Shown here: one piece after another, positions 14,792 to 63,800 of the stretch
How positions within the stretch are numbered: position 1 is the stretch's first letter
Layout of the letters: each line of letters opens with the position of its first letter
Origin: Octopus bimaculoides
Lineage: Eukaryota
NCBI RefSeq assembly: GCF_001194135.2
Contig: NC_068994.1
Location: forward strand, 36,246,985-36,310,984
Length of the DNA stretch: 64,000 nucleotides
Direction of reading: 5' to 3'
Made by a program: the position numbers and the translations under genes
Notes under the pieces: model-generated
Databases searched by the model: none
Told to the model about the DNA's origin: nothing
Seen by the model: only the letters and a program-made list of their open reading frames with translations

Positions 14792-14834
<43 letters not shown>

Positions 14835-14835
<1 letters not shown>

Positions 14836-15147
14836 CATCATCATCATCATCGTTTAGCGTCTGCTTTCCCTGCTAGCATGGGTTGGACGATTTGACTGAG
14901 GACTGGCAAGCCAGAAGGCTGCACCAGGCTCCAATCTGATCTGGCAGAGTTTCTACAGCTGGATGCCCTTCCTAACGCTAACCACTCCGAGAGTGTAGTG
15001 GGTGCTTTTATGTGCCACCGGCACGAGGACCAGTCACACAGTACTGGCAACGGCCACGCTCAACAAGGTATTTTTTACGTGATACCTGCACAGGAGTCAG
15101 TCCAGTGGCACTGGCAACGATCTCGCTCGAATGATTTTCTAACGTGC
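14835..15147 (-). mobile_element. 5'-truncated RTE-LINE 3' end or RTE-tailed SINE with (GAT)n tail
   Basis: Same sequence family as 32048, 32981, 34266, 42815 and 63801. The copy at 32981-33830 links this tail to RTE coding sequence (ERRLRWYGH). Confidence 0.8.
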
Positions 15148-17749: not shown

Positions 17750-18309
<560 letters not shown>

Positions 18310-19305
18310 NNNNNNNNNNNNNNNNNNNNNNNNNNNNNNNNNNNNNNNNNNNNNNNNNNNNNNNNNNNNNNNNNNNNNNNNNNNNNNNNNNNNNNNNNNN
18401 NNNNNNNNNNNNNNNNNNNNNNNNNNNNNNNNNNNNNNNNNNNNNNNNNNNNNNNNNNNNNNNNNNNNNNNNNNNNNNNNNNNNNNNNNNNNNNNNNNNN
18501 NNNNNNNNNNNNNNNNNNNNNNNNNNNNNNNNNNNNNNNNNNNNNNNNNNNNNNNNNNNNNNNNNNNNNNNNNNNNNNNNNNNNNNNNNNNNNNNNNNNN
18601 NNNNNNNNNNNNNNNNNNNNNNNNNNNNNNNNNNNNNNNNNNNNNNNNNNNNNNNNNNNNNNNNNNNNNNNNNNNNNNNNNNNNNNNNNNNNNNNNNNNN
18701 NNNNNNNNNNNNNNNNNNNNNNNNNNNNNNNNNNNNNNNNNNNNNNNNNNNNNNNNNNNNNNNNNNNNNNNNNNNNNNNNNNNNNNNNNNNNNNNNNNNN
18801 NNNNNNNNNNNNNNNNNNNNNNNNNNNNNNNNNNNNNNNNNNNNNNNNNNNNNNNNNNNNNNNNNNNNNNNNNNNNNNNNNNNNNNNNNNNNNNNNNNNN
18901 NNNNNNNNNNNNNNNNNNNNNNNNNNNNNNNNNNNNNNNNNNNNNNNNNNNNNNNNNNNNNNNNNNNNNNNNNNNNNNNNNNNNNNNNNNNNNNNNNNNN
19001 NNNNNNNNNNNNNNNNNNNNNNNNNNNNNNNNNNNNNNNNNNNNNNNNNNNNNNNNNNNNNNNNNNNNNNNNNNNNNNNNNNNNNNNNNNNNNNNNNNNN
19101 NNNNNNNNNNNNNNNNNNNNNNNNNNNNNNNNNNNNNNNNNNNNNNNNNNNNNNNNNNNNNNNNNNNNNNNNNNNNNNNNNNNNNNNNNNNNNNNNNNNN
19201 NNNNNNNNNNNNNNNNNNNNNNNNNNNNNNNNNNNNNNNNNNNNNNNNNNNNNNNNNNNNNNNNNNNNNNNNNNNNNNNNNNNNNNNNNNNNNNNNNNNN
19301 NNNNN
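18310..19305. other. Assembly gap (other gaps: 30829-31478, 34589-34755, 41794-42373, 44307-44394, 45340-45613, 57537-57678)
   Basis: Runs of N, mostly flanked by simple repeats. Exons could be hidden here. Confidence 1.
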
Positions 19306-19610
19306 AAGGCAGACTATATGACGCATGTGTACGAACAACCATGCTACATGGCAGTGAAACATGGGCTGTGACTGCTGAGGACATGCGTAAGCTCGCAAGG
19401 AATGAAGCCAGTATGTTCCGCTGGATGTGTAATGTCAATGTGCATACCCGTCAGAGTGTAAGTATCTTGAGAGAAAAGCTGAACATAAGAAGCATCAGTT
19501 GTGGTGTGCAAGAGAGACGATTGCGCTGGTATGGACATGTGGTGAGAATGAATGAGGATAGCTGCGTGAAAAAGTGCCACACCCTAACAGTTAAGGGAAC
19601 CCGTGGAAAA
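19306..19610 (+). mobile_element. RTE-clade LINE ORF2 C-terminal fragment
   Basis: ORF 19341-19613: LHGSETWAVTAEDMRKLARNEASMFRWMC..VQERRLRWYGHVVRM. Confidence 0.9.
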
Positions 19611-20599
19611 TAGTGTTTAATAATTGATCTGTAAAAAGTTGGTTGAAGTTAGGTTTCTTCACAAAAACAAAGAGCTAAAATAAATATAAAGAAAAGAAAA
19701 ACCTCCAAAATCCCTAGAAAAATATATTACTAACCAAAGCATCCCCAAACATTAGAATTGAAATCTCAGCTATCCACTTGCTCAATTCCTTGGAATACTA
19801 CAAGTGAACCTTCATCATTGCTGTCATCATGCTCTATTACTACTACCCTTACCACAACTAAACAATAGCAACAACAAGATCAACATGAGCAGTTACTCTT
19901 CAAAACTAGAATAATTGATGACCTATTGCACAACAGAGTCTCTAGCTCTTCTCCACAGCCAGGCCACTGATATTCTTCTCAGAATAACACAAGTGATCCA
20001 TCAGCACCATTGTCATCCTATACTACTACTACTACTCTAATTAGTGAAGAATCACTCCTTTATTCCCCCACTGTTTGCCTCAGTCTGAATGTATACCTAA
20101 CAGCTACATGATAAATCTGCCAACTGTAAATAAAATAAAATTATGAACAAATGAAACCCCAAAATATGCCACTATTCTCAACGCGAGAGATTATGTATAC
20201 ACAGTGACTGTAACTTCACCCATTTACCTGGAACAAGACACACAATTCATACAAGCAATAACAGCGAATGCCCAACTACACATCTTACAATAACACCACC
20301 ACTAAATGCTAAATCATACTTAATAACTTCTACACATATAAGCCAGAATCCTAGAATTTGTTGCTACTCCTAACACAAAAGATTATTTCTGATGTGGACT
20401 TGATGCACTAGTAAAAGCATGACACCAAACTACCACCAAATCCACAGTAGAAACATCCCTTACAGTGACAGTGTTGGTCCAGGCTTTCATCAAGCCGCAA
20501 GCAATAAAACTATAACCATATTCAACAATGCAACCATACCAACTCCAGACCACAACCCTTCCCAAAAGAACATTTTTTTTAGCGATAATAAATCTGGCA

Positions 20600-22620
20600 A
20601 AAGAAGAAAAAAAACACCTCTAGCTCTCATACAGCTCAAGCCACTGTTATTACCCCAATGCACAACAACACCGTTGCTGTCATTAACCCACAATCTTAAC
20701 TCAGTAATAATGCTGAATGTACAAGGTCTTTCACACTTCACAAATTGAACGAAAGTATCATATCTTAGAGACTTTGTATAGAGAAAGAGACTTGGTACAA
20801 CAAGAAAAACAATATGTATAGCACTAAGTGAAACACCCCTGACTTCAAACAGAATGGATGTGGAAGTAAATATGTCAGGTTACATATTACTCAGAACTGA
20901 CTACAGAATATGGAAACCAGTACAGACTTCATTCATAATGGTCAGGTCATTCTCACAGCTATTTATGTAGTATAAAATGAATGCGAGCAGCTAGGTGCAA
21001 TATAAACTGTATAGGCAAAACTTAGCCACGGTTAATTGTGGCTGTATGTCTACAAGTACATATATTGCTAGAAATAAGAGTTAAACCTCTCATAGCAGCA
21101 TAAAAGCACATTTATATATTCTGACAAGGTAGATAACTGCCAAATGAGTGAAGCAAAGTGAAAACTACACAGTTTCATCTTAATGGGAATTGTCAACAGT
21201 GTACCTCCACTGCATCAATAAATGTGTATATATAAATGTATTTTTACACAGCTATTAGTGGTTTAACTGTTACAGCACATACAGTCTAAATATCTATATG
21301 TATGCTAAATACTACATAAACAATTCCAAATTGGTCACATTTCAGCAGTGCATAACTGATGAGTTCTTCAACACCACACAACCACACAAGGAAGAGGCAA
21401 CCCTTAATTACATCAATATAAATGATGATGCAACATTGGTCATTGATGAGATAAATGAACTTAACAATGGGCCCTGGTAATTTTCTAGCTATTCTTTTAA
21501 AGAAATGCAAGAAAGCTTTCACAAAACCACTGCTAATGCTTTTCTCGAGTTTATCTTCATGTGGCAAACTTTCCAAAATGTTAAAAGACAGTATATGCCC
21601 TGTCCATAAAGTCAGTAGTAGAGCAGATGCTAAAAATTACAGGCCTGCCTATCTGACCTCATTTTTTAGAAAAATCATGGAGCGCATTGTCAGAAGGAAG
21701 GTGCTAATGCTCCTACATGAAAATATAGCTTGCTAACTAACACGCAGCATGGCTTATGTCCAAGAACGACATAACACAGCTGCTACAGCATTATAACTGG
21801 GTACTTAATTAACAGCTCAATTATTCAAAAGTTGAAGTAATACATCTTGACTTTACCATAGGTGTCAACAAAATTGATCCTAGGATATCACAAATTATAT
21901 GACCTTGGTGTTGTTGGAAAACTAGGGAACAGGCTGCATGACAATTTAAAAGATAAGAGTCAGTAAGTCACAGCCAATGGTGCCCTCTCTGAGCAAGCAT
22001 CAATTCTAAACAGTCATCAGATAATTGTACTGGGACTTTTACTGTTTATGCCATCACCCAACAAACATTGTAATCAGACCTATTTAGGACTGGGGCTATT
22101 GCTTTCCTGGTGTCAAAGTCAGTGCATGACCAGGGAATCCATTAGTAATGATGCATCATTCTGTATACATATTACTAAGACTGCAACACTGTGCAACCAA
22201 TTATCTGGTTGGATTCTGAAATCAAAATAATGAAAAAGGAAACCATGTTCCTTCTATAAAGAACAGTCATTCTCAGTTTCCTGAATTACTGCTCTCAATT
22301 ATGGTTGCTGCAATGCATCGAACTAATACTAGTGGAAGATCATGGAATATCTAGTACCCAACTCTGAAATCTCTACCAACCACCAAAATGGATACCACTG
22401 CAAAAAAGATCCTTCCCTTTCCATCTTAAGTAAGGATCCAATATGCCTTTTTGTTCAATTTTCAATACCTAACCAAAAACCCTTAGAGATCCACACTATG
22501 TAGATGTGGATGTGTTCAAAGAATGTTTAGGCAATTTTTTATCTAAGAAACCAGATGGGCCACCCACCCACATCATGGCAAGAAGTACAAAGAAGAGTAT
22601 CTTCATCTTTGGAGCCAATT
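20600..22620 (+). mobile_element. Decayed CR1-type LINE ORF2 (APE endonuclease, RT, 3' end)
   Basis: Endonuclease-like MLNVQGL..CIALSET..GYILLRTD (20710-20905). RT-like ILLKKCKKAFTKPL..CPVHK..SRADAKNYRP..IMERIVRR (ORF 21455-21736), then QHG. C-terminal VDVFKECLGNFLSKKPD (about 22505-22560). Frameshifts and stops. Confidence 0.85.
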
Positions 22621-30828: not shown

Positions 30829-31478
30829 NNNNNNNNNNNNNNNNNNNNNNNNNNNNNNNNNNNNNNNNNNNNNNNNNNNNNNNNNNNNNNNNNNNNNNNN
30901 NNNNNNNNNNNNNNNNNNNNNNNNNNNNNNNNNNNNNNNNNNNNNNNNNNNNNNNNNNNNNNNNNNNNNNNNNNNNNNNNNNNNNNNNNNNNNNNNNNNN
31001 NNNNNNNNNNNNNNNNNNNNNNNNNNNNNNNNNNNNNNNNNNNNNNNNNNNNNNNNNNNNNNNNNNNNNNNNNNNNNNNNNNNNNNNNNNNNNNNNNNNN
31101 NNNNNNNNNNNNNNNNNNNNNNNNNNNNNNNNNNNNNNNNNNNNNNNNNNNNNNNNNNNNNNNNNNNNNNNNNNNNNNNNNNNNNNNNNNNNNNNNNNNN
31201 NNNNNNNNNNNNNNNNNNNNNNNNNNNNNNNNNNNNNNNNNNNNNNNNNNNNNNNNNNNNNNNNNNNNNNNNNNNNNNNNNNNNNNNNNNNNNNNNNNNN
31301 NNNNNNNNNNNNNNNNNNNNNNNNNNNNNNNNNNNNNNNNNNNNNNNNNNNNNNNNNNNNNNNNNNNNNNNNNNNNNNNNNNNNNNNNNNNNNNNNNNNN
31401 NNNNNNNNNNNNNNNNNNNNNNNNNNNNNNNNNNNNNNNNNNNNNNNNNNNNNNNNNNNNNNNNNNNNNNNNNNNNNN

Positions 31479-31529
<51 letters not shown>

Positions 31530-32047: not shown

Positions 32048-32247
32048 ATCATCATCATCATCATCATCATCGTTTAACGTCCGCTTTCCATGCTAGCATG
32101 GGTTGGACGATTTGACTGAGGACTGGTGAAACCGGATGGCAACACCAGGCTCCAGTCTGATTTGGCAGAGTTTCTACAGCTGGATGCCCTTCCTAACGCC
32201 AACCACTCAGAGAGTGTAGTGGGTTCTTTTACGTGTCACCCCACGAA
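32048..32247 (-). mobile_element. Young short RTE-tail copy
   Basis: Nearly identical to 63801-64000; (GAT)n tail. Confidence 0.85.
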
Positions 32248-32980
32248 TCATTATAATAACTCAAGAATTTATGTTATATGTTATTTTATATACTTGTATT
32301 TGTCCATGTTGTTCATATGCATGCTCCTGACCCATCTGAGTTATTCCTTTAATATATATATATATACTTGGATTGAAAATGACTGAACGTATTCCATCAG
32401 GTGTCAGATGATGCTATTAAGTTAGACATGGCCTGGGCCAGTTTTAGCTGAAACATTTCTGAGTTTATCTAAGTTTATACCTTTGCTCACACACACACAT
32501 ACATATATACACATGCACAAATTTTACAAATATGTTCTGGTGCTACATAAAAAGCACTCAGTAGACTCTGTGAAGCGGTTGGCTTAGAAAGGGCATCTAG
32601 CCATAGCAACCATGCCAACGCTCACAGTAGAGGTTGGTACAGTCCTCTGGCTTGCTAGATCCTATCAAACTGTCCAACTCATGCCAGCATGGAAAACGGA
32701 TGTTAGATAATGATGATGATTATGATATCTACTATGTAGGTTTACATATGCTATATCATACCTTGATACTGTGTTTCCCCTTGATAGGTCTCTAGTATTA
32801 AATAAAGTGTTATGACAAGATTTTATATGTATATAAACAGACTGGCTACTAGTTCCACTGGGGTTAGTTAAGCTAGCACAAACCTCTTGTGAGACAACGA
32901 TAAGGAATGAAAACGTTTTAAGAGTAACCGTCATTTCCCTCACCCAATGAATTAGGTAATTTGAAAAGGTTTATATAATT

Positions 32981-33830
32981 ATCGTCATCATCATCGTTTA
33001 ACGTCCGCTTTCCATGCTAGCATGGGTTGGATGATTTAACTGAGGACTGGCAAACCAGATGGCTGCACCAAGCTACAATCTGATCTGGCAGAGTTTCTAC
33101 AGCTGGATGCCCTTCCTAACACCAACCAATCCAAGAGTGTAGTGGGTGCTTTTACGTGCCACCGGCATGAGTGCCAGTCAGGCGGTACTGGCAACAGCCA
33201 CGCTGAAGTGGTGTTTTTAATGTGCCACCTGCACAGGAGCCAGTCCAGCGGCACTGGCAACGACCTCGCTCGAATGCTTTTTCACGTGCCACCGGCACAA
33301 GTGCCAGTAATGTGATGCTGGTAACGATCACGCTCGAATGGTGCTTTTTACGTGCCACCAGCACGGAAGCCAGTCAGCTGGTCTGGCAGCGATCACACTC
33401 AGATGGTGTTCCTAGCATTCCACTGGCATGGGTGCCAGTTATCGAATTTGCAAATTTGATTTGATTTCGATTTCACTTGCCTCAACAGGTCTTCGCAAGC
33501 AGAGTTTAGTGTCCAATGAAGGAAAGGTTCACATAAGTAGGCTGGTTACACCCCTGTCATAGGCCACGGGTTATGGTCTCATTTGGCTTGCTGGGTCTTC
33601 CCAAGCACAGCATATTTCCAAAAGTCTCAGTCACTAGTCATTGCCTCAGTGAGGCCTAATATTCAAAGGTTGTGCTTCACCACCTCATCCCAGGTCTTCC
33701 TGGGCCTACCTCTTCCACAGGTTCCCTCAACCGCTAAGGTATGGGACTTTTCACACAGTTATCCTCATCCATTCTAGCCACATGACCATACCAGCGCAGT
33801 CGTCTCTCTGGCACTGGTATGGTCATGTGG
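32981..33830 (-). mobile_element. 5'-truncated RTE LINE with about 65-bp tandem array in its 3' UTR
   Basis: ERRLRWYGH codons at about 33781-33808; about 5 units of tttacgtgccacc..ggcaacg at 33145-33440; (GAT)n tail. Confidence 0.85.
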
Positions 33831-34258: not shown

Positions 34259-34265
34259 TATATAT

Positions 34266-35170
34266 ATCATCACCATCATCATCGTTTAACATCTGCCTTC
34301 CATGCTGGCATGGGTTGGACGATTTGACTGAGGACTGGCGAACCAGATGTCTGCACCAGGTTCCAATTTGATCTGGCAGAGTTTCTACAGCTGGATGCCC
34401 TTCCTAACGCCAACCACTCAGAGTGTAGTGGGTGCTTTTACGTGCCACTGGCACAAGGGCAAGTCAGCGGTACTGGCAATGGCCACGTTCAAAATGGTGT
34501 TTTTTACGTGCCACCTGCACAGGAGCCAGTCCAGCAGCACTGGCAACGACCTCGCTCAAATGTTTTTTCATGTGCCACCGGCACAAGTNNNNNNNNNNNN
34601 NNNNNNNNNNNNNNNNNNNNNNNNNNNNNNNNNNNNNNNNNNNNNNNNNNNNNNNNNNNNNNNNNNNNNNNNNNNNNNNNNNNNNNNNNNNNNNNNNNNN
34701 NNNNNNNNNNNNNNNNNNNNNNNNNNNNNNNNNNNNNNNNNNNNNNNNNNNNNNNAACGATCACGCTCAAATGGTGCTATTTACGTGCCACTGGCATGGA
34801 AGCCAGACAGCTGCTCTGGCAATGATCATGCTCGGACGGTGCTCTTAGTGCTCCACTGGCACAGGTGCCAGTCATCGAATTTGATTTAATTTCAATTTCA
34901 CTTGCCAACAGGTCTTCGCAAGCCGAGTTTAGTGTCCAATGAAGGAGAGGTTGGCATGGGTGCCAGTTGTTGAATTTGGACCGATTTCATTTGCCTCAAC
35001 AGGCCTTCGCAAACAGAGTTTAGTGTCCAATGAAGGAAAGGTACGCATAAGTGGGCTGGCTACACCCCTGGCAGAGGCCTTGGATTATGGTCTCATTTGG
35101 CTTGCCTGGTCTTCTCACGCACTGCATATTTCCAAAGGTCTCAGTCACGAGTCATTGCCTTGGTGAGGCC
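34266..35170 (-). mobile_element. 5'-truncated RTE LINE 3' UTR copy (gap inside the tandem array)
   Basis: Colinear with 32981-33660. Confidence 0.85.
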
Positions 35171-35171
35171 C

Positions 35172-35857
35172 AAAAATAAAAACTTAGCACCAAGCTTAAG
35201 GATGTACAAGGTATCAAATCTGTTCAGAAATAGGAGTCAAAATCCCAAATCTACCACCGAAAGCACCGAAATATGACAGAGACAACCGTAAGCAAGTGAA
35301 CGGTTAAAGAATTAAACAATGAGAACAATTAAAAACATACTTATATTCACCACAGATAATATTAACAATAATAATATCATTCTTTGAATGTTTACATTCA
35401 AATTTTACTCATAAATATAGTTGCACCCAGGCTGGCTGATTTTGGTGCAAAACGAGTCAGAACACTAATAAATGCTCAACGTGGCAGAGTCAGAATTTTT
35501 CCTTGCCAATTTATGCTGACGAGGGTTGAGGTTCACGGGCCAGAACCCGAAACCATTGTACATGAATATCCAAATGACATAATCCTTAATAGTAAGTTTT
35601 TATTAGTTAACTCTTTAACCATTTACTCACTTACTGCTGTCTTCGTCGTATTTCGATGCTTTCAGGAGTGGATTTGGGATTTTGATTCCTATTTCTAAAC
35701 AGGTTTAACACCTTGTGTATCCTTAAGCTTAGTGCTAACTTTTAATTTTAATTTATAGCTATAATGTTATTTAAAAACTTGGAACCATCGATATTATTAT
35801 TGTTGTTATTAACAATTACTTATATTCACCACAGATAGTATTAACAATAATAATATC
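35172..35857 (+). mobile_element. Non-coding hammerhead-containing element: about 480-bp unit with partial direct repeat and an inverted 5' arm
   Basis: 35172-about 35335 is an imperfect inverted copy of about 35591-35750. Segment 35341-35425 recurs at 35820-35857 plus 36396-36444 (period 479). An older homologue of about 35620-35857 lies at about 38460-38705. Confidence 0.7.
35509..35567 (+). ncRNA. Minimal type I hammerhead ribozyme, core intact (family 2)
   Basis: ATTTATG-CTGACGA-GGGTT..AACCC-GAAA-C-CATT-G-TA^CATGAAT. Stem I has 7 bp (one G-U), stem II 5 bp with G10.1-C11.1, stem III 2 bp plus a 4-nt loop. GUA cleavage predicted after 35560. Confidence 0.8.
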
Positions 35858-35940
35858 TTTCTATATTTAAGAGATGAGGAATTATGTACATTACTTACAT
35901 TATTTACATTTGACAGATATTTGTCCTCATCTTGTCAGTT

Positions 35941-35986
35941 AACACAACATTTCGACTGATATACCCTCCAGCCTTCATCAGGTGTC
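35941..35986 (-). ncRNA. Minimal hammerhead motif (family 1)
   Basis: GACAC-CTGATGA-A-GGCTG..CAGTC-GAAA-TG-TT^GTGTT. Core intact; CG>TG change in the palindromic stem III. Confidence 0.6.
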
Positions 35987-36145
35987 TTGGAGAAATTTCC
36001 AACCTGGATTCTCATTCCTAAGGTATTTTTCGATGTTGTTATTATTATTATTATTATTATTATTCAGGTCACTGCCTGGAATCGAACCCAGAACCTTGGG
36101 GTTAGTAGCCCGTGCTCTTAACCACTACGCCATATTAACCAGCAC

Positions 36146-36220
36146 GGGCATATGGCATAGTGGTTAAGAGTGCGGGCTACTAACCCCAACATTCCAAGTT
36201 CGATTCCAGGCAGTGACCTG
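36146..36220 (+). other. tRNA-derived module (A-box- and B-box-like) within PLE family A 3' end
   Basis: TGGCATAGTGG (A-box-like), anticodon-like arm GGG-CTACTAA-CCC, and AGTTCGATTCC (B-box-like). No good acceptor stem, so it is not called a tRNA gene. Confidence 0.7.
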
Positions 36221-36629
36221 GATAATAATAATAATAAAAACAACATTGAAAAATACCTTAGGAATGAGAATCCAGGTTCAAAATTTCCCCAAGACACCTG
36301 ATGAAGGCTGGAGAGTATATCAGCTGAAACGTGTTAACAACAAACAAGATGAGGACAAATATCCGTCAAATGAAAATAATGTAAATAATAATATCATTCT
36401 TCAAATGTTTACATTCAAATATTACTCATATATATATACTTGCAAATTTTAATTTTGGACATAAAGTTACCAAAGGTTTCGTACCCAAAAGGCTGGCTTT
36501 GTGGACACAAAACCTTTGGTAACTCTATATCCAAAATTAAAATTTTTGTTATAAAAATTACTGCTCTATTCTTTAGAGTTTGCTTCTTTTCTGATATATG
36601 TTTTATTAATTAACTATATATACAAGAGT

Positions 36630-36681
<52 letters not shown>

Positions 36682-37203
36682 TATGTGTATAAATATTTAT
36701 ACATACATATATACAGGCATATTCACATATACATACAAACATAAATGTATCATCATCATCATCGTTTAACATCTATCTTCCATGCATGCATGCATGTATA
36801 GGATGGTTCACATGAGCTGGCCTGGTAGAAAAACTATTCTATGCTACTGTGTCTGTTTTGGCAGGTTTTTATGGCTGGATGACCTCCCTAATACCAAATA
36901 CTCTGCATGTATATATATATATATGTGTGTATTTTTTTTTTTTTAGAAAGGCATCTCAATATAGAAACCATGCCATCACAATAGCAAGACAAAATCCTCC
37001 AACAAATTGTATCCTGTCAAAACATTTAACCCTTACTAGCACGAAAAGTGGATGTAAAATAAACTATGATGATAAGAATGACGATATGCATATATAAATG
37101 TACAAGCATTATCTACATATGTGCATGTTTGCATTAATGTGTGTGTTTGTGTGTATTGTAAATGCAATAAACAATATAAAAAACAAAATAGCGAAAATAA
37201 ATA

Positions 37204-37620
37204 CATTATTTACATTTGACAGATATTTGTCCTCACCTTATTCGTTATTAATACAACATTTCAACTGATGTACCCTCCAGCCTTTATCAGGTGTCCTGGG
37301 GGAATTTCGAACCTGGGTTCTCATTCCTAAGGTATTTTCCCAATGTTGCTATTATTATTATTATTATTATGGAATCAAACTCAGAATTTTGGGGTTTGTA
37401 GCCCACGCTCCTAACCACTATGCCATATGCCCATGGGCAATTATGGAGTGAATTTTAGGGCTTATAAATCTAATATTTTCCTATCCTTCCTTAATACCAG
37501 TTCCCATACGCTACTCATATCTGCACTGGGTCTGCTTAGGAGGTTATTATGTCCTAACATACGTGCTGCCTCTTTTAGTGGCCCAAACTTGTACTTCATT
37601 AAAAGGTAGGTGTCCAGATA
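37204..37620 (-). mobile_element. 5'-truncated PLE family A copy (ORF end, tRNA-like module, mutated hammerhead CTGATAA)
   Basis: Colinear with about 47545-47960. Confidence 0.85.
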
Positions 37621-38445: not shown

Positions 38446-38829
38446 ATTATGATGATATGTCTTAATTCTTTATCCATTTGCCCAATTACTGTTGTTTTCT
38501 GTCATATTCTCAGTGTTATTGGTGGTTTTATTGGGGTTTTAATTCCTATTTCTAACAGGTTAGGCGCCTAGTATGCCCTTATGCATAATGCTAATTTTAA
38601 TCTATAGCTATTTAATGCTATTCAATATCTGTAACCACCTATATTATTGCAGTTATTATTATCAATTATTTATATTCATTGCAGATTATATTAACAATAA
38701 TAATATTTGAATATTCACTCCTTATTTTATATATATACATGCAAGTATCTTCTATGAGTGTCACATGGCCAAACAAGCTCAATTACACTTTTCTCTTTTA
38801 TAGTTAGATTATTTCTGGTGTCAGGCACC

Positions 38830-39175: not shown

Positions 39176-40081
39176 TAGGGTGTTTGGGCTAAATTTGACA
39201 GTTGGCTTAAAAGGAAAACAAATTACAATATTCCATCTAAAAATGAAAGTATTCTTAAAAAATCAAAAACATTTCCACTAGATTATAGCTGAAAGATAAC
39301 ATTTTACTCAAAGTAGCTACCCTCAACTTCCACCTTGGTTTCAAGATGGTTCCAAAACCTGCCACATGCATTTCTCATTGTGTCCCTGGGAAGACCTTTG
39401 AAAATTTCATTGATCTTGGCCACCAGCTCAGCCTTGGTGTTGCAGGTAGTATGGTTGGTGTCTTTTTCAGCTGTACCCCACACATAGTAATCCATGTGAT
39501 TACAATTGAGGGAATTGGGAGACCAGAAATTGGCTGGTGAAGTTATAGAAATTCTCTGATAATCACTTCTGACTCTTTCTGGAGGTATGGCAAGCAACTG
39601 AATCATGCTACCATGCATATGGCCTTCCAATAACAACTCTCTCCAGCCAGGGTTTGACCACGATCTCTAGCAGCTTCACAACCATCTGAATTGAGTCTGA
39701 GACCCACTTCAAAGGTGTAGGGTGGCATGTGTGAGTCACCTTCACTGAAGATACACCTAAGGACCATCACAGTTTAAGGGAATTTGGTTTTCATGATACA
39801 TGAGGCATCACAGAGATTGGAATATTTTAATGTTACAGTGTTCACAGAACATTGAACAGCAGTTGGTATTTTGACAACCACCACGAATCATCATGATACA
39901 GGTAACTCCTTCCCGATATTCAAATGGCTTCGAGTCCTCCATGTCAGCTAACTTTTTCTCAGCTACAACTTTAATCTTCATGCTTTTCAATGCCATTAAC
40001 TTTTTACCAATACATCGAGCTATTCCGAAAAAAAAACACAAGGTAACATCAAAATTGCTAAATTCAGCCCAAACATCCTTT
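39176..40081 (-). mobile_element. Internally deleted Tc1/mariner-superfamily transposon
   Basis: TIRs agggtgtttgggctaaattt / aaattcagcccaaacatcct. Translation MKTKFP*TVMV..EGLRLNSDG-like..WSPNSLNCNHMDYYVWG..NTKAEL..VEVEGSYFE* (ORF 39304-39636). Confidence 0.9.
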
Positions 40082-41196: not shown

Positions 41197-42459
41197 TGTA
41201 AATGATACTATTTATTTCCCTACTGCTGTTGTTTCACACCTCTTCCTCCTTCCTGACCTACTCTTATTGCCTTCACTTCCCCTCCTCTAGATTGATTATT
41301 TACTGTACCCACCTCAATCCCCATCTCTAATCATCAGTCACACACTTTTCACACCAGTGCATTTATCTACCCACCCACTTTTATTTTTCCTTTGTCCCTA
41401 ATCTCTCTCTCATATTTATTATGTACCTTGAGAGTATGCACCCCCTCTCTCTTTCTCTCTCCAGCTGGGGAAGCTATGCATTCAGCAAGACTGTCCCTCT
41501 AACATACTCTGACATGCTTCAATACAATACTTCACTCACTGAAGAGATCCTGTCTTGCATGTACTTGGCAAACTCACTAGTGTTGGTGACTCTGTAAAGT
41601 GGTAGCATTGTGAAGGGCATAGGAAAAGCTGTAGAAACTATGCCAAGTGGACATTGGTGCTCAGCACTGTCCTCTCACTCGTCACTTCTGATTGAACCAT
41701 GAGACCTTTCAGCCCATGCAAGCATGGAAAAATGGACTTTCGATGATGATAATAATAATAATAATAATAATATATATATATATGTATGTATATNNNNNNN
41801 NNNNNNNNNNNNNNNNNNNNNNNNNNNNNNNNNNNNNNNNNNNNNNNNNNNNNNNNNNNNNNNNNNNNNNNNNNNNNNNNNNNNNNNNNNNNNNNNNNNN
41901 NNNNNNNNNNNNNNNNNNNNNNNNNNNNNNNNNNNNNNNNNNNNNNNNNNNNNNNNNNNNNNNNNNNNNNNNNNNNNNNNNNNNNNNNNNNNNNNNNNNN
42001 NNNNNNNNNNNNNNNNNNNNNNNNNNNNNNNNNNNNNNNNNNNNNNNNNNNNNNNNNNNNNNNNNNNNNNNNNNNNNNNNNNNNNNNNNNNNNNNNNNNN
42101 NNNNNNNNNNNNNNNNNNNNNNNNNNNNNNNNNNNNNNNNNNNNNNNNNNNNNNNNNNNNNNNNNNNNNNNNNNNNNNNNNNNNNNNNNNNNNNNNNNNN
42201 NNNNNNNNNNNNNNNNNNNNNNNNNNNNNNNNNNNNNNNNNNNNNNNNNNNNNNNNNNNNNNNNNNNNNNNNNNNNNNNNNNNNNNNNNNNNNNNNNNNN
42301 NNNNNNNNNNNNNNNNNNNNNNNNNNNNNNNNNNNNNNNNNNNNNNNNNNNNNNNNNNNNNNNNNNNNNNNNNAGATGGAGGTGGATCAATACAAATTTG
42401 ATTTGTACAGATCTCTAATCTTGTTTCAACTATATATATATACATATATATGTATAAAC

Positions 42460-42814: not shown

Positions 42815-42960
42815 AGGAAGGGCATCCAGCTGTAGAAACTCTGCCAGAACAGACTGGAGTCTAGTGTAGCCTTCCAGTTCGCCAGTCCCCAGTCAAATCG
42901 TCCAACCCATGCTAGTATGGAAAGCGGACGTTAAATGATGATGATGATGATGATGATGAT
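42815..42960 (+). mobile_element. Short RTE-tail copy ending in (GAT)n
   Basis: Reverse complement of the 32048-type sequence. Confidence 0.8.
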
Positions 42961-43065
42961 ATATATGTGCCTGGGGTAGTCTTCTACCTGACTGGCTCCT
43001 CTCAACCATCCTACCCATGCATACATGGAAGACAAGCGTTAAATAATGATGATAGTATGCATATA

Positions 43066-44306: not shown

Positions 44307-45837
44307 NNNNNNNNNNNNNNNNNNNNNNNNNNNNNNNNNNNNNNNNNNNNNNNNNNNNNNNNNNNNNNNNNNNNNNNNNNNNNNNNNNNNNNNNATGTGT
44401 GTGTGTGTGTGTGTGTATGTGTGTGTGTGTGTGTGTGTGCATTTGTGAGTGCATGTGCATACATCTTAGTTTTCATAGGTGGCGTCTCCTAGCAGATAGT
44501 TAATAGAGGGGAGATAATTATTTCTTCATAATTGTCAGGATGAGAAGTTTGAATTTGAGGGAGAAAAAAATGAACAGAATACAGATATTTAATTCAGTGT
44601 TTCTTTTTTTCATCATTACTATTTACAAAGTTATGGGGATCACATTCCTTGAACTTCAAGTAATGGAAAGCTAAATTGATGCTTCATCACACATGAACCT
44701 ACACAGATATATATATCTTTTACCTTCAGTCACAAGCTACATCTTTTCCCTTTGTCTTTTATTTCTCCTCTCATTTTTAGCATTATTCTTGCTTCTGTTT
44801 TCTCCCCAAACCAATTTTACCTCCTCCTTTTTTAATGTAATTTATTTTTAATTTATTCATTTATTTATTTATTATTTTTGTCTGTGATACTGAGTTACCA
44901 TTATGGTAATTTTTATTTCTTAATTCTTATTTCCATTTTAATTCTATTTTAATCAATTGTAACAGTTTATTTCTGATAAGGTCTTTCTAATTATGTATAT
45001 CTTTCACACCAGTTTCTATGAATTTTTCACTATCCAGTTTCTTGATTTTTAATTTCTATGTGACTCACCTTCATGTCTATATATTTTTCTGTGATGGTCA
45101 ATCACCTCTTTCCAATAGATTCATGTTGTTTCCAAAAGTAGCTGCCCAATCAGCTTTAAATATTTATTCAATGAGTTGATGGTCATGAATATTTATAAAC
45201 ACTTGTTAACTATTGTATTGTTTTGAATAATCATGACTGTCTAGTGAATGGTTACACAAAACTCTGAGTAACAGTTTATGAAATCGTTTTAGCTTCAGTA
45301 AAATAATGTATGTGCATGTGTGTGTGTGTGTGTGTGTGTNNNNNNNNNNNNNNNNNNNNNNNNNNNNNNNNNNNNNNNNNNNNNNNNNNNNNNNNNNNNN
45401 NNNNNNNNNNNNNNNNNNNNNNNNNNNNNNNNNNNNNNNNNNNNNNNNNNNNNNNNNNNNNNNNNNNNNNNNNNNNNNNNNNNNNNNNNNNNNNNNNNNN
45501 NNNNNNNNNNNNNNNNNNNNNNNNNNNNNNNNNNNNNNNNNNNNNNNNNNNNNNNNNNNNNNNNNNNNNNNNNNNNNNNNNNNNNNNNNNNNNNNNNNNN
45601 NNNNNNNNNNNNNGAGTATATAACGAATGATAGAAAAGTGGATAATACAAAAAACTTTATTGCTCACATTTCGACACACCCTGCATCGATCACTCGTGGA
45701 TGGGATATTGTACAAGTGGTTGTGGTGCACCCCTTGGTACAGACATATCTCCTCAGGTGATAGTATCTTGTTAAATTAACTCTGTTTCAATCGATTTTAG
45801 TGGCAGTATGTTTAAACTGTTAGGCAGGAATGGTGAG

Positions 45838-47993
45838 CATTATTTACATTTGATGGATATTTGTCCTCATCTTGTTTGTTGTTAACACAATGTTTCGGCT
45901 GATATATCCTCCAGCCTTCATCAGGTATTTGGGGAAATTTCGAACCTCAGTTCTCATTCCTAAGGTATTTTTTAATGTTATTATTATTATTATTATTATT
46001 GTTCAGGTCATTGCATGGAATCAAACTCAGAATCTTGGGGTTAGTAGCCCGCACTCTTAACCATTACGCCATATGCCCGTGCAATTATGGAGTGAATTTT
46101 AGGGTTATAAATCTAATATTTTTCTATCCTTCCTTAATACCGGTTCCCATAAACTGCTACTATCTGCACTTGGTCTGCTTAGGAGGTTGTTGTGTCCTAG
46201 CATATGTGCTGCTTCTTTTAGTTTTCATATTTTCCAATGGTGTTCTCTGTCTATTATTTTAACTTCATCCCACAGGGGGAGGTGGTCTCCATTTTGCCAT
46301 ACATGATCAGCTAAACCCGATTTATCAATATCTCCTCGTGTCACAGCTTTGCAATGTTTGTCTTATTTTGATTGGGTGGCATGTTTCACCTTTCTATAAC
46401 TTACCACAGCTGCATGGGATGGAGTACATGCAGTCTTTGGTCATATTCTCTTCTATTAGTGAAGGAGATATTTGCGAAGTGCTGTATTACTCTTGAATAC
46501 TGTCCTGATGTCATATGGGCTGCATTTCTTTTGTATCTTTTCGGAGAGGCCTTTCACATAGGGTAGACAAACTGTGGACAGTTTATTGGCCTCATCCTCT
46601 CTCTTCTTCATAATTGGAGTGGATAGTATACTTTTGGGGTAGTTATTGCTTAACAGATTATTAGCGAGATTGATCATTTCTTCATTGTGTGTATCACGAT
46701 CGCTACATATATTCTTTCCATGATGTTTTAGGCACTGAGCAATCCCTCTCTTTACACTGTATGGATGGTGGGAATTGAAGTTGAGGTATCATCCAGTAAA
46801 GGTTGGCTTGTGGTATACGGATGTTCTGAATCCACACTTGGTGTGTGTTATTAATAAGTCCCGGAAAAAATAGAAAAAAGAAAGACAATCAGCTGGCATT
46901 CCTGAACGCATTAATAACATGCACCAAGTATGGATTCAGGACATCTGTATACCACAAGCCGACCTTTACTGGACAATACCTCAACTTCAATTCCCACCAT
47001 CCATACAGTGTAAAGAGAGGATTGCTCAGTGCTAAAACATCATGCAAATAATACAAGTAGCGATGGTAATAGACACTACGAAGAAATGATCAAGCTCAAT
47101 AACGATCTGTTAAGCAACAACTACCCTGAAAGTATACTATCTGCTCTAATTATGAAGAAGAGAGAGGATGAGGTCGATAGACTCTCTACTGTCTGTCTAC
47201 CCTATGTGAAAGGCCTCTCCGAAAAGATACAAAAGATATGCAGCCCATATGACATCAGGACAGTATTCAAGAGTAATACAACACTTCACAAATATCTCCT
47301 TCGAGTAAACCCACCAATAGAAGAGATTACGACCAAAGACTGCGTGTACTCCATCCCATGCAGCTGTGGTAGGTTATACAAAGGCGAAACATGTCGCCCC
47401 CTCAAAATAAGGGTAGACAAACATCACAAAGCTGTGACACGATAAATCGAGTATAGTTGATCATGTATGGAAAAATGGAGACCACCTCCCCCTGTGGGAT
47501 GAAGTTAAAATAATAGACAGAGAACACCACTGGAAAATATGAAAACAAAAAGCAGCAGCACATATGCTAGGACACAACTTCCTAAGCAGACCGAGTGCAG
47601 ATATGAGCAGTTTATGGGAACCGGTATTAAGGAAGGATAGAAAAACATTAGATTTATAAGCCCTAAAATTCACTCCATAATTGCCCATGGGCATATGGCA
47701 TAGTGGTTAAGAGCACAGGAAAAATGGAGACCATCTCCCCCTGTGGGATGAAGTTAAAATAATAGACAGAGCACAGGCTACTAACCCTAAGATTCCGAGT
47801 TCGATTCCAAGCATAATAATAATAATTCTGTGTAGTCAACAATATCAAAAACAAATGAATACCTTAAGAATGAGAACCCAGGTTCGAAATTTCCCCAAAC
47901 ACCTGATGAAGGCTGGAAGGTATATCAACAAACAAGATGAGGACAAATATCCGTCAAATGCACATAATTCCTCATCTCTTAAATATAGAACTG
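45838..47993. mobile_element. Palindromic Penelope-like element, family A (two 5'-truncated copies head-to-head)
   Basis: Right arm encodes LAFLNALI..TSVYHKPTFTGQYLNFNSHHP (RT thumb) and CVYSIPCSCGRLYKGETCRPLKIRV (GIY-YIG; ORF 47029-47445). Left arm 45838-about 46856 is its reverse complement. 12-bp TSD aggaatggtgag at 45826-37 and 47994-48005. Confidence 0.92.
45884..45929 (-). ncRNA. Minimal hammerhead motif (family 1)
   Basis: AATAC-CTGATGA-A-GGCTG..CAGCC-GAAA-CA-TT^GTGTT. Core and stem II perfect; CG>CA change in stem III. Confidence 0.6.
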
Positions 47994-51479: not shown

Positions 51480-52330
51480 GGGTGTTATTTATATGCAGCC
51501 AAGACACCACTTTCCAGACAAGCATGACTAACATAAACAAAGATCTTCAAAACATCATCTAACAGGAACATGGGAAACTATTCTTATTCAGCACCAAGAT
51601 CCATATTTAAGAAACACAGTAATAAAGCTTCTTTTGAACAAAACACAACGAAACTATTCACGGGCATATGACGTGGTGGTTAAAAGTGCGAGCTACTAAC
51701 CCCAAGATTCCATATTCGATTCCAGGCAGTGACCTGAACAACAACAGCAGCACCAGCAGCAACAGCAACAACAACATCAAAAAATACCAGCGAAATTTCC
51801 AAGACACCTGATGAGTATATCAGCAAAAACATTGTGTTAACAACAAACAAGATAAGGACAAATATCTGTCAAATGTAAAAAATGTACCATTCACTATTAT
51901 TATGAATGACAGGCCTTTTCATCATGACCACAGATTAATAATATAGCCAAAACTGCAACTGATTTACTAGGCTTTCTCTTCAGAGTCAGAAAATTATACA
52001 GATCTGAGCAGTTTCTAATCCTTCTGTATAGCACAAATGTGGCCTACATTAAACTACTGCTCATACATATGTGATGAGTCAGTTCCTATACTCACAATTT
52101 AAATCACATCTACATACAGGCTGTTCAGCTGAGGTAAATTTTCACTCACTTATACACAGCTACTACAAGCATTAGGCCACTAATATGATGCGTTCTCACT
52201 GTTTCTACTACCATTACTGCAACGGTCACTACTCTTCTGGTTTAGAAGGCTGTTTGCTATTATCACCCAAGCTAAACTGATAATCTTATTCTTCTTTGTC
52301 ATTCTTCTTATATTTTATTTCTCAAGCTTC
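51480..52330 (+). mobile_element. Decayed CR1-type LINE C-terminal remnant, interrupted by the short PLE family A copy
   Basis: PQINNIAKTATDLLGFLFRVRKLYRSEQFLILL resembles PHISNIAKSASKKLGFLFRARRYFTPEQLLIL. Confidence 0.6.
51659..51887 (+). mobile_element. Solo short PLE family A 3'-end copy starting at the tRNA-like head
   Basis: cacgggcatatg..gctactaacccc..ttcgattccaggcagtgacctg, then an (AAC/AGC)n linker, a deleted hammerhead and the tail. Confidence 0.85.
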
Positions 52331-54830: not shown

Positions 54831-55479
54831 ATCTTTACACACACACACATATACATAAATATACATCACCATTATCATTTAATGGCTGTATTCCATGCTG
54901 ATATAATTTGGATGGTTTGACAGGAGCTGGTGAGCCAGAGGACTGCACCAAACTCCAGCACCTGCCTTGGCATGACTTCTATAGCTGGATGCACTTCCTA
55001 ACACCAACCATTTTTCAGAGTGTACCAGGTACTTTTAACATGGTACAAGCATGGGTGAGATTACTAAGTAATTTACAAGACAAATCCCCTCAATTGGGAG
55101 GAGGGGAGTAGTACAGAAGGAAGTGACTTTATACCATGTGATGAGAGGTTAAGAATGATAGAGGGACGGGAACAGTATCTTGCTGCAGAGGAGATATATA
55201 GTCCCCCATTTGGAAGAGAAGGATCATAGTGAAGATGTGTCAGGGTGTAATTTCTAGTTGCAGAAAAGTGAATAAAGAGAAATGGTATGAGTCAATAAGG
55301 CAATATCAGGTAATAACCATATACACAAACATACACACACACACATATATCATTTAGTTTTACACAGTATAAAGCTACGAGCTACAAATAGTTTCTTGTT
55401 TAGGAGACAAGGGTCTAAGCAGGTTTTTTTTACAACATGCCTTGTGTCTCTAAGCAATCTTCAGGCTCTGAACATATGG

Positions 55480-57301: not shown

Positions 57302-57841
57302 TTAGGGAAAAGAACCAAGGTTCATGAACTCATCGATGAAAATCCACTGTCACATATAGAAAAATTAATAAGTAAAAGCACAATAAATAAGTATAATATA
57401 ATTCCTGTGAAAAAATCCTGTGAAGAGATGTTGGCGTGGGCTCCCACCCCGGCATCCGAAACTTGGAGCTTTATCATGGCTACCGAATACGTGTCACATA
57501 TTTTTACAGATAAATTCTTCTATTTACATAATATGGNNNNNNNNNNNNNNNNNNNNNNNNNNNNNNNNNNNNNNNNNNNNNNNNNNNNNNNNNNNNNNNN
57601 NNNNNNNNNNNNNNNNNNNNNNNNNNNNNNNNNNNNNNNNNNNNNNNNNNNNNNNNNNNNNNNNNNNNNNNNNNNNNNATATATGCAGTTACATATAAAT
57701 ATACAGTTACATATAAATATATAGTTATATATAAATATATATAACTATATATTTATATAACTATATACAAATATATAGTTATATATGTTTATATATAGTC
57801 ATATATATATATAGAGAGAGAGTTATATATATATATAGCTT

Positions 57842-62780: not shown

Positions 62781-63800
62781 TTCAAGGTACTCTGCTAGGA
62801 AACTTGAGGCTCAGAGACAGAATGCCTATGCATGGAGATGCACTGCTTCATGGGGCTCATTGTAGCTCCTCTTTAGTACTTAATAAAATTCTGTATCAGA
62901 TTTGTACATTTTGTTGGTTTGTACACAGTATCTTTACAAGGAGTATTCCATGGAAGTCCTACAGTTATATCTAGTAGGGAAGAGACCTCATCTAGTGTAA
63001 TGATATTCCTCTTCACTGTAGAGATAGAGTACTGGCATGTTTGGTTACAAATTTCACACATTGGTGGTGTGATTGATATACCCCTGATTTTTGTGGCTAT
63101 TCCTATTGCCCAAACCAGAGGTGTATTTTCTGCAAATCTCATTGGAGTGAACATCATGTCACATGCAATTTCAAGGAGAGTCCACTTTGAGGTGCTACCT
63201 GAACTGACTAATTCTATCCCCAGCACTATGTATATTAAGTGTGTACCTATTAAAAGCAGCTATCATGCTGGCCACATTAGGAGAGCTGGAATATGACAAC
63301 TTCATTATGTTTTCATATATTCGGTGGTATCTATGCTATAGAGACTGGAAAATGATTTTATGGGCTTTATTTTTCGCTCTACAAGAGAAGGGTGAGCTGT
63401 ATCATATTACTCGTCCTCTTGGTATCATCATCTATCATTCACTCTTAGAACTGATCCAACTCTAGCTATCAGTGTATCCTGCTCTCATTCCTACCCTTAC
63501 AAGTGCTGGTGCCACAACAGAATGCATCCAGTACACTGTGTTAAGTGCAATATTGAGAGTTCTCTTTAGTCATATCAGAGACATAACAACTTTCCTAATG
63601 CCAGTACCGAATGCATTCTTTGGCACCTACATATGTCAACTACCTTATAAAGCGGGTAATGTTAGAAATGGTATTCAGCTATAAAAGCTAAGCCAGAAAG
63701 GAAATTTACAAGTAAGATGTGGTCTCCCAACCACTTCTGCTATTCAGTAATGATCTATCCAACTTAGGCCAGCATGGAAATCAGATATAAAATGGCAATA

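What the first reader, a model, noticed from the sequence alone, without database searches (positions are those of the whole stretch)
35172..35857. Candidate cephalopod non-LTR retrozyme: intact hammerhead in a roughly 480-nt non-coding, tandemly permuted unit
Seen: a minimal type I hammerhead at 35509-35567 with all core nucleotides, a 7-bp stem I, 5-bp stem II and GUA site. It lies in a unit whose start (35341-35425) repeats 479 bp later (35820 onward). An inverted copy of the unit's 3' part precedes it, and an older homologue of the 3' part plus repeat junction lies at about 38460-38705. There is no credible ORF. Established: PLEs carry minimal hammerheads and integrate as partial tandem or inverted repeats, and metazoan non-LTR retrozymes are short tandem hammerhead repeats that yield circular RNAs. 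Inference: this is a PLE-dependent retrozyme-like family whose multimers would self-cleave to about 480-nt monomers or circles. Only one hammerhead is present at this locus, and I cannot verify whether the family is already described.
Basis: partly seen in the sequence, partly recalled or inferred. Interest (0 to 1): 0.85.

Follow-up and report, generated by a model that had tools for sequence, protein, structure and literature searches.

The report
Lone hammerhead in octopus retroelement remnant
A complete hammerhead-ribozyme motif sits in a decayed, non-coding repeat of about 480 bp in an octopus genome, inserted in the partial-tandem-plus-inverted style of Penelope-like retroelements; it is probably a cephalopod member of a known class, not a shown circle-making retrozyme.

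Summary
The sequence features are real. A type I hammerhead (HHR) with every core nucleotide lies at 35509-35567. A motif this good is expected about 5e-4 times per window by chance. It sits in a non-coding unit whose start recurs 479 bp later. An inverted fragment precedes the unit, and an older 5'-truncated copy lies 2.9 kb downstream.

Three corrections are needed:
- The second unit is cut after about 43 nt by a later insertion of about 520 bp, an inverted pair of Penelope-like element (PLE) tails. It resumes at 36384.
- The locus has only one HHR. The 170-nt segment that carries it is single-copy in the window.
- The other copies lack that segment. Both downstream copies end at the same point, 135 nt upstream of the cleavage site.

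Rfam does not recognise the motif, and the HHR fold is not the minimum-energy fold. Helix III has only 2 bp and no partner HHR is nearby.

The window is Octopus. It holds a PLE with its own, different, conserved minimal HHR, and that PLE shows no similarity to the unit.

Best reading: a decayed PLE-style compound insertion of a short HHR-bearing non-autonomous element. It is retrozyme-like in kind but fails the retrozyme definition at this locus. No other copy could be retrieved, so conservation is untested. Verdict: new member of a known kind, modest interest.

The parts
35173..35326 (-). Inverted copy of segment C (unit 35596-35749). The weaker alignment may continue to about 35340, which equals unit position ~35584. 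It lacks the family's 3' end (segments D and A).
   Evidence: 154 nt, 81%; alignment
35328..35425 (+). Segment A, upstream partial tandem copy (pLTR-like). It ends in ...CATAAATATAGTTGCA.
   Evidence: 35328-35383 = 35808-35862 (91%); 35367-35419 = 36384-36436 (92%)
35426..35595 (+). Segment B, single-copy in the window. It carries the hairpin 35421-35427/35444-35450 (TTGCACC/GGTGCAA) and the hammerhead.
   Evidence: blastn-short and nhmmer find no second copy. Only the hairpin weakly resembles 36478-36512 (1/1000 shuffles).
35509..35567 (+). Type I hammerhead motif. The predicted cleavage is between 35560 (A17) and 35561.
   Evidence: HHR-constrained fold -11.0 against minimum free energy -16.7 kcal/mol. 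No Rfam match.
35596..35807 (+). Segments C (35596-35749) and D (35750-35807), the body shared with the older copy.
35808..35861 (+). Segment A', first part: the start of the second unit, cut off by a later insertion.
35862..36379 (.). Later insertion, not part of the unit. It is an inverted pair of 5'-truncated tails of the resident PLE family (arms 35890-36057 and 36222-36389, 89%). It is flanked by a 10-16 bp target duplication AATAATAATATCWTTC (35846-35861 and 36374-36389). A 30-34 nt extra tail at the left end matches 47957-47990.
36380..36444 (+). Segment A', second part. It ends in ...TATATATACTTGCA, and unrelated sequence follows (a 102-nt palindrome at 36444-36545).
38462..38743 (+). 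Older, independent 5'-truncated copy (C-D-A only, no HHR). It lies directly after a (TA)n microsatellite and ends at the same ...TATATACATGCA point, with different flanks.

Best explanation
This is the decayed remnant of one PLE-style compound insertion of a short non-coding retroelement that carries a type I hammerhead. The element is about 480 nt, ordered B (hairpin + HHR) - C - D - A.

Layout of the locus:
- an inverted fragment of C (35173-35326);
- a 5'-truncated direct copy, A only (35328-35425);
- one near-complete copy, B-C-D-A (35426-36444).

A later PLE-tail pair then split that copy.

Inferred mechanism: a PLE reverse transcriptase/endonuclease copied the element by target-primed reverse transcription with template switches. 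This gave the partial tandem and the inverted piece. In a multimeric or read-through transcript the HHR would cut after 35560.

At this locus there is one HHR, with a 2-bp helix III and no partner. At most it could cut a transcript once, and it cannot release a monomer or a circle.

Shown: the motif, the repeat architecture, the nested PLE insertion, and the Octopus and PLE context. Inferred: that B belongs to the family, PLE dependence, and any cleavage.
For: - All HHR core positions and all three helices are present on the element's sense strand.
- About 0.004 such motifs per Mb per strand arise by chance. That is about 7e-7 for a given 170-nt segment.
- A abuts B with no gap, and the A-to-A' offset is 479-480.
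- The inverted fragment plus partial tandem plus dispersed 5'-truncated copy is the architecture described for PLEs and their non-autonomous derivatives (PMC8557442).
- The inverted copy and the older copy both begin 25-45 nt downstream of the cleavage site, and none reaches beyond it. This fits RNA whose 5' end was set at or near 35561.
- PLEs were active here. There is a head-to-head PLE pair at 45.8-48.0 kb, and a PLE-type insertion with a target duplication lies inside the unit.
- The helix III style (2 bp plus a 4-nt loop) matches the metazoan type I HHRs of retrozymes. It does not match the helix-III-less min-HHR of the resident PLE.
- The unit is non-coding.
Against: - Segment B and its HHR are seen only once, so there is no conservation or covariation evidence.
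- Both downstream copies (unit 2 and the older copy) end at the A terminus, 135 nt upstream of the cleavage site. HHR cleavage therefore did not define those 3' ends.
- Two other copies start at nearly the same place. This could equally mean that the family is only C-D-A.
- The inverted fragment lacks the element's 3' end, unlike the textbook PLE inverted copy.
- C against inverted C is 81% identical, but A against A' is 91-92%.
- Rfam gives no Hammerhead match.
- The HHR fold is 5.7 kcal/mol above the minimum-energy fold.
- Loop 3 is not palindromic.
- There is no similarity to the tail of the resident PLE.
Confidence: 0.5

Rival explanations
1. The repeat is only the terminal non-coding part (3' UTR or pLTR) of an ORF-bearing PLE family whose coding copies lie elsewhere. 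Under this reading B-C-D-A is the last ~480 nt of 5'-truncated copies joined head to tail, and the HHR is that PLE's pLTR ribozyme.
For: - Most genomic PLE copies are 5'-truncated, arranged as partial tandems with inverted pieces, and carry their HHR in the terminal repeats (PMC4209133, PMC8557442).
- Some PLE families have HHRs with a small helix III.
- Octopus vulgaris is annotated with 31 recently active PLE families (PMC13282606).
Against: - There is no coding remnant in or next to the unit.
- There is no similarity to the only PLE family in the window.
- That family's own HHR is a different min-HHR, 55-90 nt from its 3' end.
- Here the HHR is about 350 nt from the shared 3' end.
Confidence: 0.2
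2. The mobile family is an HHR-less, SINE-like element of about 300 bp (C-D-A). Two copies landed about 160 bp apart, the upstream one with a twin-priming-like 5' inversion. Segment B is spacer DNA, and its hammerhead is an orphan relic of something else or a chance motif.
For: - All three copies share the same 3' end.
- The inverted copy, the older copy and the C start agree on a 5' end near 35584-35607.
- B is single-copy.
- The layout inverted-C followed by A, with D missing, is the pattern of a 5'-inverted insertion.
- A possible 7-nt duplication GACATAA lies at 35576-35582 and 36458-36464.
- Rfam is silent.
Against: - A full HHR on the element's sense strand in a given 170-nt spacer has a chance of about 7e-7.
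- Even allowing thousands of real HHRs per genome, the chance is about 1e-4.
- Two same-orientation copies with A abutting B exactly would be a further coincidence.
- The candidate target duplications are weak.
Confidence: 0.15
3. One reading: the family is a true non-LTR retrozyme. Multi-unit arrays elsewhere in the genome would be transcribed, self-cleaved into monomers of about 479 nt and ligated into circles. This locus would then be a truncated 'monomer derivative'.
For: - It fits the class on type I HHR style, lack of coding, co-occurrence with PLEs, and unit length. Retrozyme consensus lengths of 51-972 bp are reported.
- Monomer derivatives are common in retrozyme families.
- The 479-nt permuted monomer folds better than shuffles as a circle (z = -2.6).
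Against: - There is no second HHR here.
- The shared DNA 3' ends are not at the cleavage site.
- No related ORF-like sequence exists in 15 billion predicted proteins, which include transcriptome-derived assemblies. This is only weak evidence against high abundance.
- Helix III is weak and there is no dimer partner.
Confidence: 0.15

Closest known systems
Metazoan non-LTR retrozymes (Cervera & de la Pena 2020, PMC7229834; Li, Clavereau & Pollet 2026 preprint 10.64898/2026.07.22.740005)
   Same: - Short non-coding repeat with a type I HHR that has a 1-2 bp helix III.
- Head-to-tail repetition.
- Co-occurrence with PLEs.
- Unit length inside the reported 51-972 bp range.
- Described in molluscs (mussel).
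   Different: - Only about 1.2 units and a single HHR.
- The family copies seen here mostly lack the HHR segment.
- The ends are fixed 135 nt upstream of the cleavage site.
- There is no expression or circle evidence.
- Cephalopods are not covered in the papers found.
Minimal HHRs in PLE pseudo-LTRs (Cervera & de la Pena 2014, PMC4209133)
   Same: - HHR inside an element inserted as a partial tandem plus an inverted copy.
- G10.1-C11.1 pair.
- Long helix II.
- Expected low activity as a monomer.
   Different: - No RT/GIY-YIG ORF between the repeats.
- A helix III with a loop is present.
[quoted passage not shown]
- Helix I is 7 bp rather than 4-5 bp.
- The window's own PLE carries the textbook min-HHR (GACAC-CUGAUGA-A-GGCUGG...UCAGCC-GAAACGUU|GUGUU), which is unrelated in sequence.
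Non-autonomous PLE derivatives forming pLTRs (e.g. the MRC1/Chlamys non-autonomous elements in Craig et al. 2021, PMC8557442)
   Same: Short ORF-less elements that produce pLTRs and head-to-tail insertions by PLE machinery.
   Different: - Those elements share their 3' ends with an autonomous family. No such similarity was found here.
- Chlamys and Naiad elements mostly lack canonical HHRs.
Schistosoma Sm-alpha SINE-like HHR elements and newt satellite 2 (from my own knowledge and PMC4209133)
   Same: Dispersed and tandem repeats of about 330 nt that carry a type I HHR with a short helix III and work best as dimers.
   Different: - Those families have thousands of HHR-bearing copies and shown cleavage.
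- Here there is one copy and no test.

Membership tests
Hammerhead ribozyme, type I | Conserved core C3-U4-G5-A6-N7-G8-A9, G12-A13-A14, the A15.1-U16.1 pair, and H17 (not G) | tested here: met
   CUGACGA 35516-35522; GAA 35549-35551; A 35552 pairs with U 35559; A17 is 35560
Hammerhead ribozyme, type I | Three helices around the core, with helix I open and helices II and III closed; G10.1-C11.1 pair | tested here: met
   Helix I 7 bp, helix II 5 bp (extendable), helix III 2 bp. However, the HHR fold is -11.0 against a minimum free energy of -16.7 kcal/mol, and the minimum-energy fold pairs core bases.
Hammerhead ribozyme, type I | Match to the Rfam Hammerhead covariance models at the gathering score | tested here: not met
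   No Hammerhead match at the gathering score over the whole window, nor at E<=10 over 35000-36000
Hammerhead ribozyme, type I | Core and helices conserved, or covarying, among related copies | tested here: inconclusive
   No second copy of 35426-35595 in the window, in metagenome contigs, in Octopus sinensis or other mollusc loci, or through ORF-based searches
Hammerhead ribozyme, type I | Mg2+-dependent self-cleavage at H17 | not testable with these tools
   Needs in vitro transcription of 35490-35590 and of a dimeric construct
Metazoan non-LTR retrozyme | Tandem repeat units that each carry a type I HHR (at least two HHRs in direct orientation) | tested here: not met
   One HHR in the window apart from the PLE-tail min-HHRs. 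The second unit ends at 36444 without segment B.
Metazoan non-LTR retrozyme | Non-coding unit of retrozyme size | tested here: met
   The unit is 479 nt. The 104-aa ORF has no homologue or Pfam family. The published range is 170-400 nt (PMC7229834) or 51-972 bp.
Metazoan non-LTR retrozyme | Co-occurrence with autonomous PLEs in the same genome | tested here: met
   PLE GIY-YIG ORF at 47029-47445 and an inverted partner copy. Best hit is an Octopus sinensis protein. The same PLE family is in O. sinensis locus L011 at 80-87%.
Metazoan non-LTR retrozyme | Expressed as monomeric linear and circular RNA | not testable with these tools
   No transcriptome access. The only data are in silico: the circular monomer folds with z = -2.6.
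PLE pseudo-LTR min-HHR | HHR lies in direct repeats that flank an RT plus GIY-YIG ORF | tested here: not met
   There is no coding remnant between or beside the repeats. The HHR is in the unrepeated segment B, not in the repeated segment A.
PLE pseudo-LTR min-HHR | [quoted passage not shown] | tested here: not met
   No unpaired nucleotide. Helix I is 7 bp. Loop 3 is CAUU, and ACCAUUGU is one substitution from a palindrome. By contrast, the resident PLE tails meet all these features.
PLE-type insertion architecture | Partial head-to-tail tandem, an adjoining inverted 5'-truncated copy, and dispersed 5'-truncated copies | tested here: met
   Caveat: the inverted piece lacks the family's 3' end.
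PLE-type insertion architecture | The non-autonomous element shares its 3' end with an autonomous PLE family | tested here: not met
   No similarity to the resident PLE tail beyond (AAT)n. Other octopus PLE families could not be examined.

The most novel reading that the evidence does not exclude
An octopus family of short PLE-dependent elements exists in which a canonical-style type I hammerhead sits near the 5' end of the unit. One version: the family forms multi-unit arrays elsewhere that yield circular RNAs of about 480 nt, which would be the first cephalopod retrozyme. Another version: the ribozyme sheds itself from the transposition template. Most progeny (C-D-A copies that start 25-45 nt after the cleavage site) would then be ribozyme-less and dead on arrival.
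Probability: 0.15. Interest if true: 0.5.

Novelty: new member of a known kind. Interest (0 to 1): 0.3.

Why it matters
If the family is confirmed genome-wide, HHR-bearing non-autonomous PLE relatives (retrozymes) would extend to cephalopods. The retrozyme papers found here do not cover that clade. It would also give a case where the same genome carries two distinct HHR styles: a min-HHR in an autonomous PLE, and a helix-III-bearing HHR in a short non-coding unit. That bears on the current proposal that animal retrozymes derive from PLE pLTRs.

As it stands the locus is a single decayed copy. HHRs in PLE-related repeats are already known across metazoans, including molluscs, so a specialist would not be surprised.

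Tried and rejected
1. Rfam at the gathering score and at E<=10 gave no Hammerhead match. The sub-threshold miRNA and snoRNA matches are noise.
2. I first read 35863-36383 as an inverted pair of tRNA-SINEs. I rejected this in favour of 5'-truncated tails of the resident PLE. The same tRNA-like stretch, (AAT)n and min-HHR follow the PLE ORF at 46225->45838 and at 47445->47990, and also in O. sinensis.
3. The CUGAUGA...GAAA core in those tails failed my first descriptor. With the published min-HHR rules it fits. It is a separate element, not a second HHR of the unit.
4. Searches for more copies all failed:
   - ORF 35384-35698 against 5.8 billion clusters: nothing.
   - phmmer against 1.84 billion representatives: only two bacterial repeat proteins, matched through GPEP..TIVHE low complexity.
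   - A three-frame peptide profile of segment C: nothing.
   - An HHR pattern scan of metagenome contigs: 9 unrelated loci.
   - O. sinensis locus L011 and three loci of assembly ERZ21867824: no unit.
5. Homology of B to the sequence after unit 2 or after the older copy is not significant. The exception is about 35 nt around the hairpin.
6. Pfam on the short TE ORFs and on PLE hits gave nothing, and PDB gave nothing. The PLE identity rests on three things: the GIY-YIG-type motif CVYSIPCSCGRLYKGETCRPLKIRVDKH, a JGI name for hit P0109, and the head-to-head architecture.
7. Pol III A-box-like (35481-35491) and B-box-like (35530-35541) strings in B have 2-3 mismatches, and no tRNA model matches there. 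I dropped this idea.

Full report
**The motif**

Reading 35509-35567 on the + strand gives a complete type I hammerhead:
- Helix I is ATTTATG (35509-35515) paired with CATGAAT (35561-35567), 7 bp with one G-U.
- The core is CUGACGA (35516-35522).
- Helix II is GGGUU/AACCC with the G10.1-C11.1 pair.
- GAAA is 35549-35552.
- Helix III has two pairs (A15.1-U16.1 and C15.2-G16.2) closed by CAUU.
- The cleavage site GUA ends at 35560.

The 16-nt helix II loop can stack a tandem GA/AG and a 4-bp stem (GGUU/GGCC) with a CACG loop, so helix II is long.

My descriptor found one other, much weaker match in the window (helices 4/3/2, at 52847-52785 on the minus strand). Chance estimates:
- 1 of 400 Markov-simulated windows reached helices >=5/4/2, and none reached 7/5/2.
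- In 240 Mb of random sequence there was one such hit. That is about 0.004 per Mb per strand, or about 5e-4 per window and roughly 20 per octopus-sized genome.

Three points count against activity:
- Rfam reports no Hammerhead match at the gathering score, or at E<=10 in a 1-kb search.
- The minimum-energy fold of the region (-16.7 kcal/mol) keeps helix I but pairs core bases. The HHR-constrained fold is -11.0 kcal/mol.
- A 2-bp helix III is known to make monomers poor cleavers (PMC4209133). Loop 3 is not palindromic (ACCAUUGU is one substitution from a palindrome), and there is no second HHR to dimerise with.

**The repeat architecture**

I name the segments as follows:

| Segment | Coordinates |
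|---|---|
| A | 35328-35425 |
| B (hairpin 35421-35450 and the HHR) | 35426-35595 |
| C | 35596-35749 |
| D | 35750-35807 |
| A' | 35808-35861 plus 36380-36444 |

- The inverted arm 35173-35326 is 81% complementary to C.
- A matches A' at 91-92%, with an offset of 479-480.
- The older copy 38462-38743 is C-D-A at 74%.

At about 35862 the second unit is interrupted by roughly 520 bp, and it resumes at 36380/36384.

After A', and after the older copy's A, the sequences are unrelated to B and to each other. So two independent copies end at the same ...TATATAC(T/A)TGCA point, which is 135 nt upstream of the HHR cleavage site. B has no other copy in the window. Only its first ~35 nt, the hairpin, weakly resemble the loop of a palindrome that follows unit 2.

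The inverted arm and the older copy both begin about 25-45 nt downstream of the cleavage site.

**Context**

The window is Octopus.
- The ORF 47029-47445 carries a PLE-type GIY-YIG motif. Its best hit is an Octopus sinensis protein.
- A 20-kb O. sinensis locus shares the same PLE family at 80-87% nucleotide identity, plus other repeats.
- The PLE is present as two 5'-truncated copies, head to head: the minus copy runs 46920->45838 and the plus copy 46845->47990.
- Its 3' UTR holds a tRNA-like stretch, (AAT)n and a minimal HHR of the Cervera & de la Pena 2014 type: GACAC-CUGAUGA-A-GGCUGG...UCAGCC-GAAACGUU|GUGUU. This has the unpaired nucleotide after position 9, a 6-bp helix II, a 5-bp helix I, and a palindromic ACGU in place of helix III.
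- That motif is the conserved block of the UTR in 14 tails from three sources.

The roughly 520 bp that interrupt unit 2 are an inverted pair of 5'-truncated copies of this tail. They have a 10-16 bp target duplication and a 30-34 nt extra tail at one end, as described for PLE insertions. So PLE machinery acted at this very spot, after the unit arrived.

The unit itself shows no similarity to this PLE's tail beyond (AAT)n.

**Interpretation**

The layout is a partial tandem, an inverted 5'-truncated piece, and a dispersed 5'-truncated copy next to a (TA)n tract. This is the published signature of PLEs and their non-autonomous derivatives (PMC8557442).

A full HHR on the sense strand of a given 170-nt segment has a chance near 7e-7. 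I therefore take B to be part of the element. I read the locus as one compound insertion of a roughly 480-nt non-coding, HHR-bearing, PLE-type element, now decayed and later split.

The HHR style, with a short helix III and loop, is that of metazoan retrozyme HHRs and not the PLE min-HHR (PMC7229834, PMC4209133).

The retrozyme definition is not met here, however:
- there is one HHR in about 1.2 units;
- the HHR lies in the unrepeated segment;
- the shared DNA ends are not HHR-defined.

Three rivals stay open:
- The repeat is the terminal part of an ORF-bearing PLE family.
- The mobile family is only C-D-A, and B is spacer with an orphan HHR. The concordant 5' and 3' ends of three copies favour this. 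The odds against an HHR in such a spacer, and the exact A-B abutment, oppose it.
- The family is a true retrozyme with arrays elsewhere.

**Limits**

No cephalopod genome could be searched directly. Every indirect route to more copies failed.

**Literature**

HHRs in PLEs and in short tandem non-coding repeats are known across metazoans, including mussels (PMC4209133, PMC7229834). A 2026 preprint derives animal retrozymes from PLE pLTRs but sampled no mollusc. The 2026 Octopus vulgaris repeat annotation lists PLEs but mentions no ribozyme.

**Verdict**

This is a new member of a known kind, of modest interest.

Noticed in passing
window 45838-47990: Two 5'-truncated copies of a Penelope-like element lie head to head: the minus copy runs 46920->45838 and the plus copy 46845->47990. 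Both carry RT C-terminal and GIY-YIG endonuclease remnants with frameshifts. The same family occurs in Octopus sinensis locus L011 at 80-87% identity.
   Followed up: partly
window 45929-45884 (-), 35986-35941 (-), 36293-36335 (+, 3-nt deletion), 47893-47925 (+, GAAA deleted); L011 ~10960-11000; L001 ~11000-11040: The 3' UTR of that PLE family carries a textbook minimal hammerhead: GACAC-CUGAUGA-A-GGCUGG...UCAGCC-GAAACGUU|GUGUU. It is the best-conserved block of the UTR across Octopus and a second mollusc assembly (ERZ21867824), where the core is CUGAAGA or is mutated.
   Followed up: partly
window 36067-36139 (-), 36150-36220 (+), 46000-46075 (-), 47685-47810 (+); L001 10815-10895: A tRNA-like stretch lies between the PLE stop codon and the min-HHR in every copy, so 5'-truncated PLE tails look like tRNA-derived SINEs. 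Only one copy gives a sub-threshold Rfam tRNA match (20.9 bits), and ARAGORN finds none. It is open whether this is a built-in pol III unit or an old SINE capture.
   Followed up: partly
window 35862-36379; also 37202-37579 (-) and 51659-51887: Further 5'-truncated copies of the PLE tail. The pair at 35862-36379 is inverted (arms 89%). It has a 10-16 bp target duplication, and a 30-34 nt extra tail at one end only that matches 47957-47990.
   Followed up: yes
window 36444-36545: A 102-nt near-perfect palindrome (84%) lies directly after the second unit. Its loop (ACCCAAAAGGCUGGCUUUGUGG) resembles the loop of hairpin 35421-35450 in segment B (1 of 1000 shuffles). The meaning is unknown.
   Followed up: partly
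window 32972-33667 and 34259-35181 (also ~14812-15147, 32051-32240, 42815-42968, 54852-55057, 63799-63990): An abundant repeat family with internal sub-repeats of about 65-90 bp abuts the left end of the finding at about 35172-35181. It may have truncated the inverted arm.
   Followed up: no
window 35576-35582 / 36458-36464; 38448-38461 / 38753-38762: Possible short target duplications: GACATAA around copy C-D-A', and tatgatgatatgtc / tatgagtgtc around the older copy. Both are weak. They conflict with alignments that extend the copies a little further 5'.
   Followed up: partly
window 19341-19613 (+), 21455-21736 (+), 39304-39636 (-), 61748-62044 (-): Short ORFs that by eye look like LINE reverse-transcriptase fragments, a Tc1/mariner transposase C-terminus, and an LTR-retroelement RT fragment. 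Pfam gave no match for these short pieces.
   Followed up: no
window, e.g. ~18300-19300, 30830-31480, 34590-34750, 41800-42380, 44310-44400, 45340-45620, 57530-57680: Runs of N (2907 in all) next to (TA)n, (CA)n and (GA)n microsatellites. These are assembly gaps of a short-read scaffold, so tandem structures in the window may be collapsed or incomplete.
   Followed up: no
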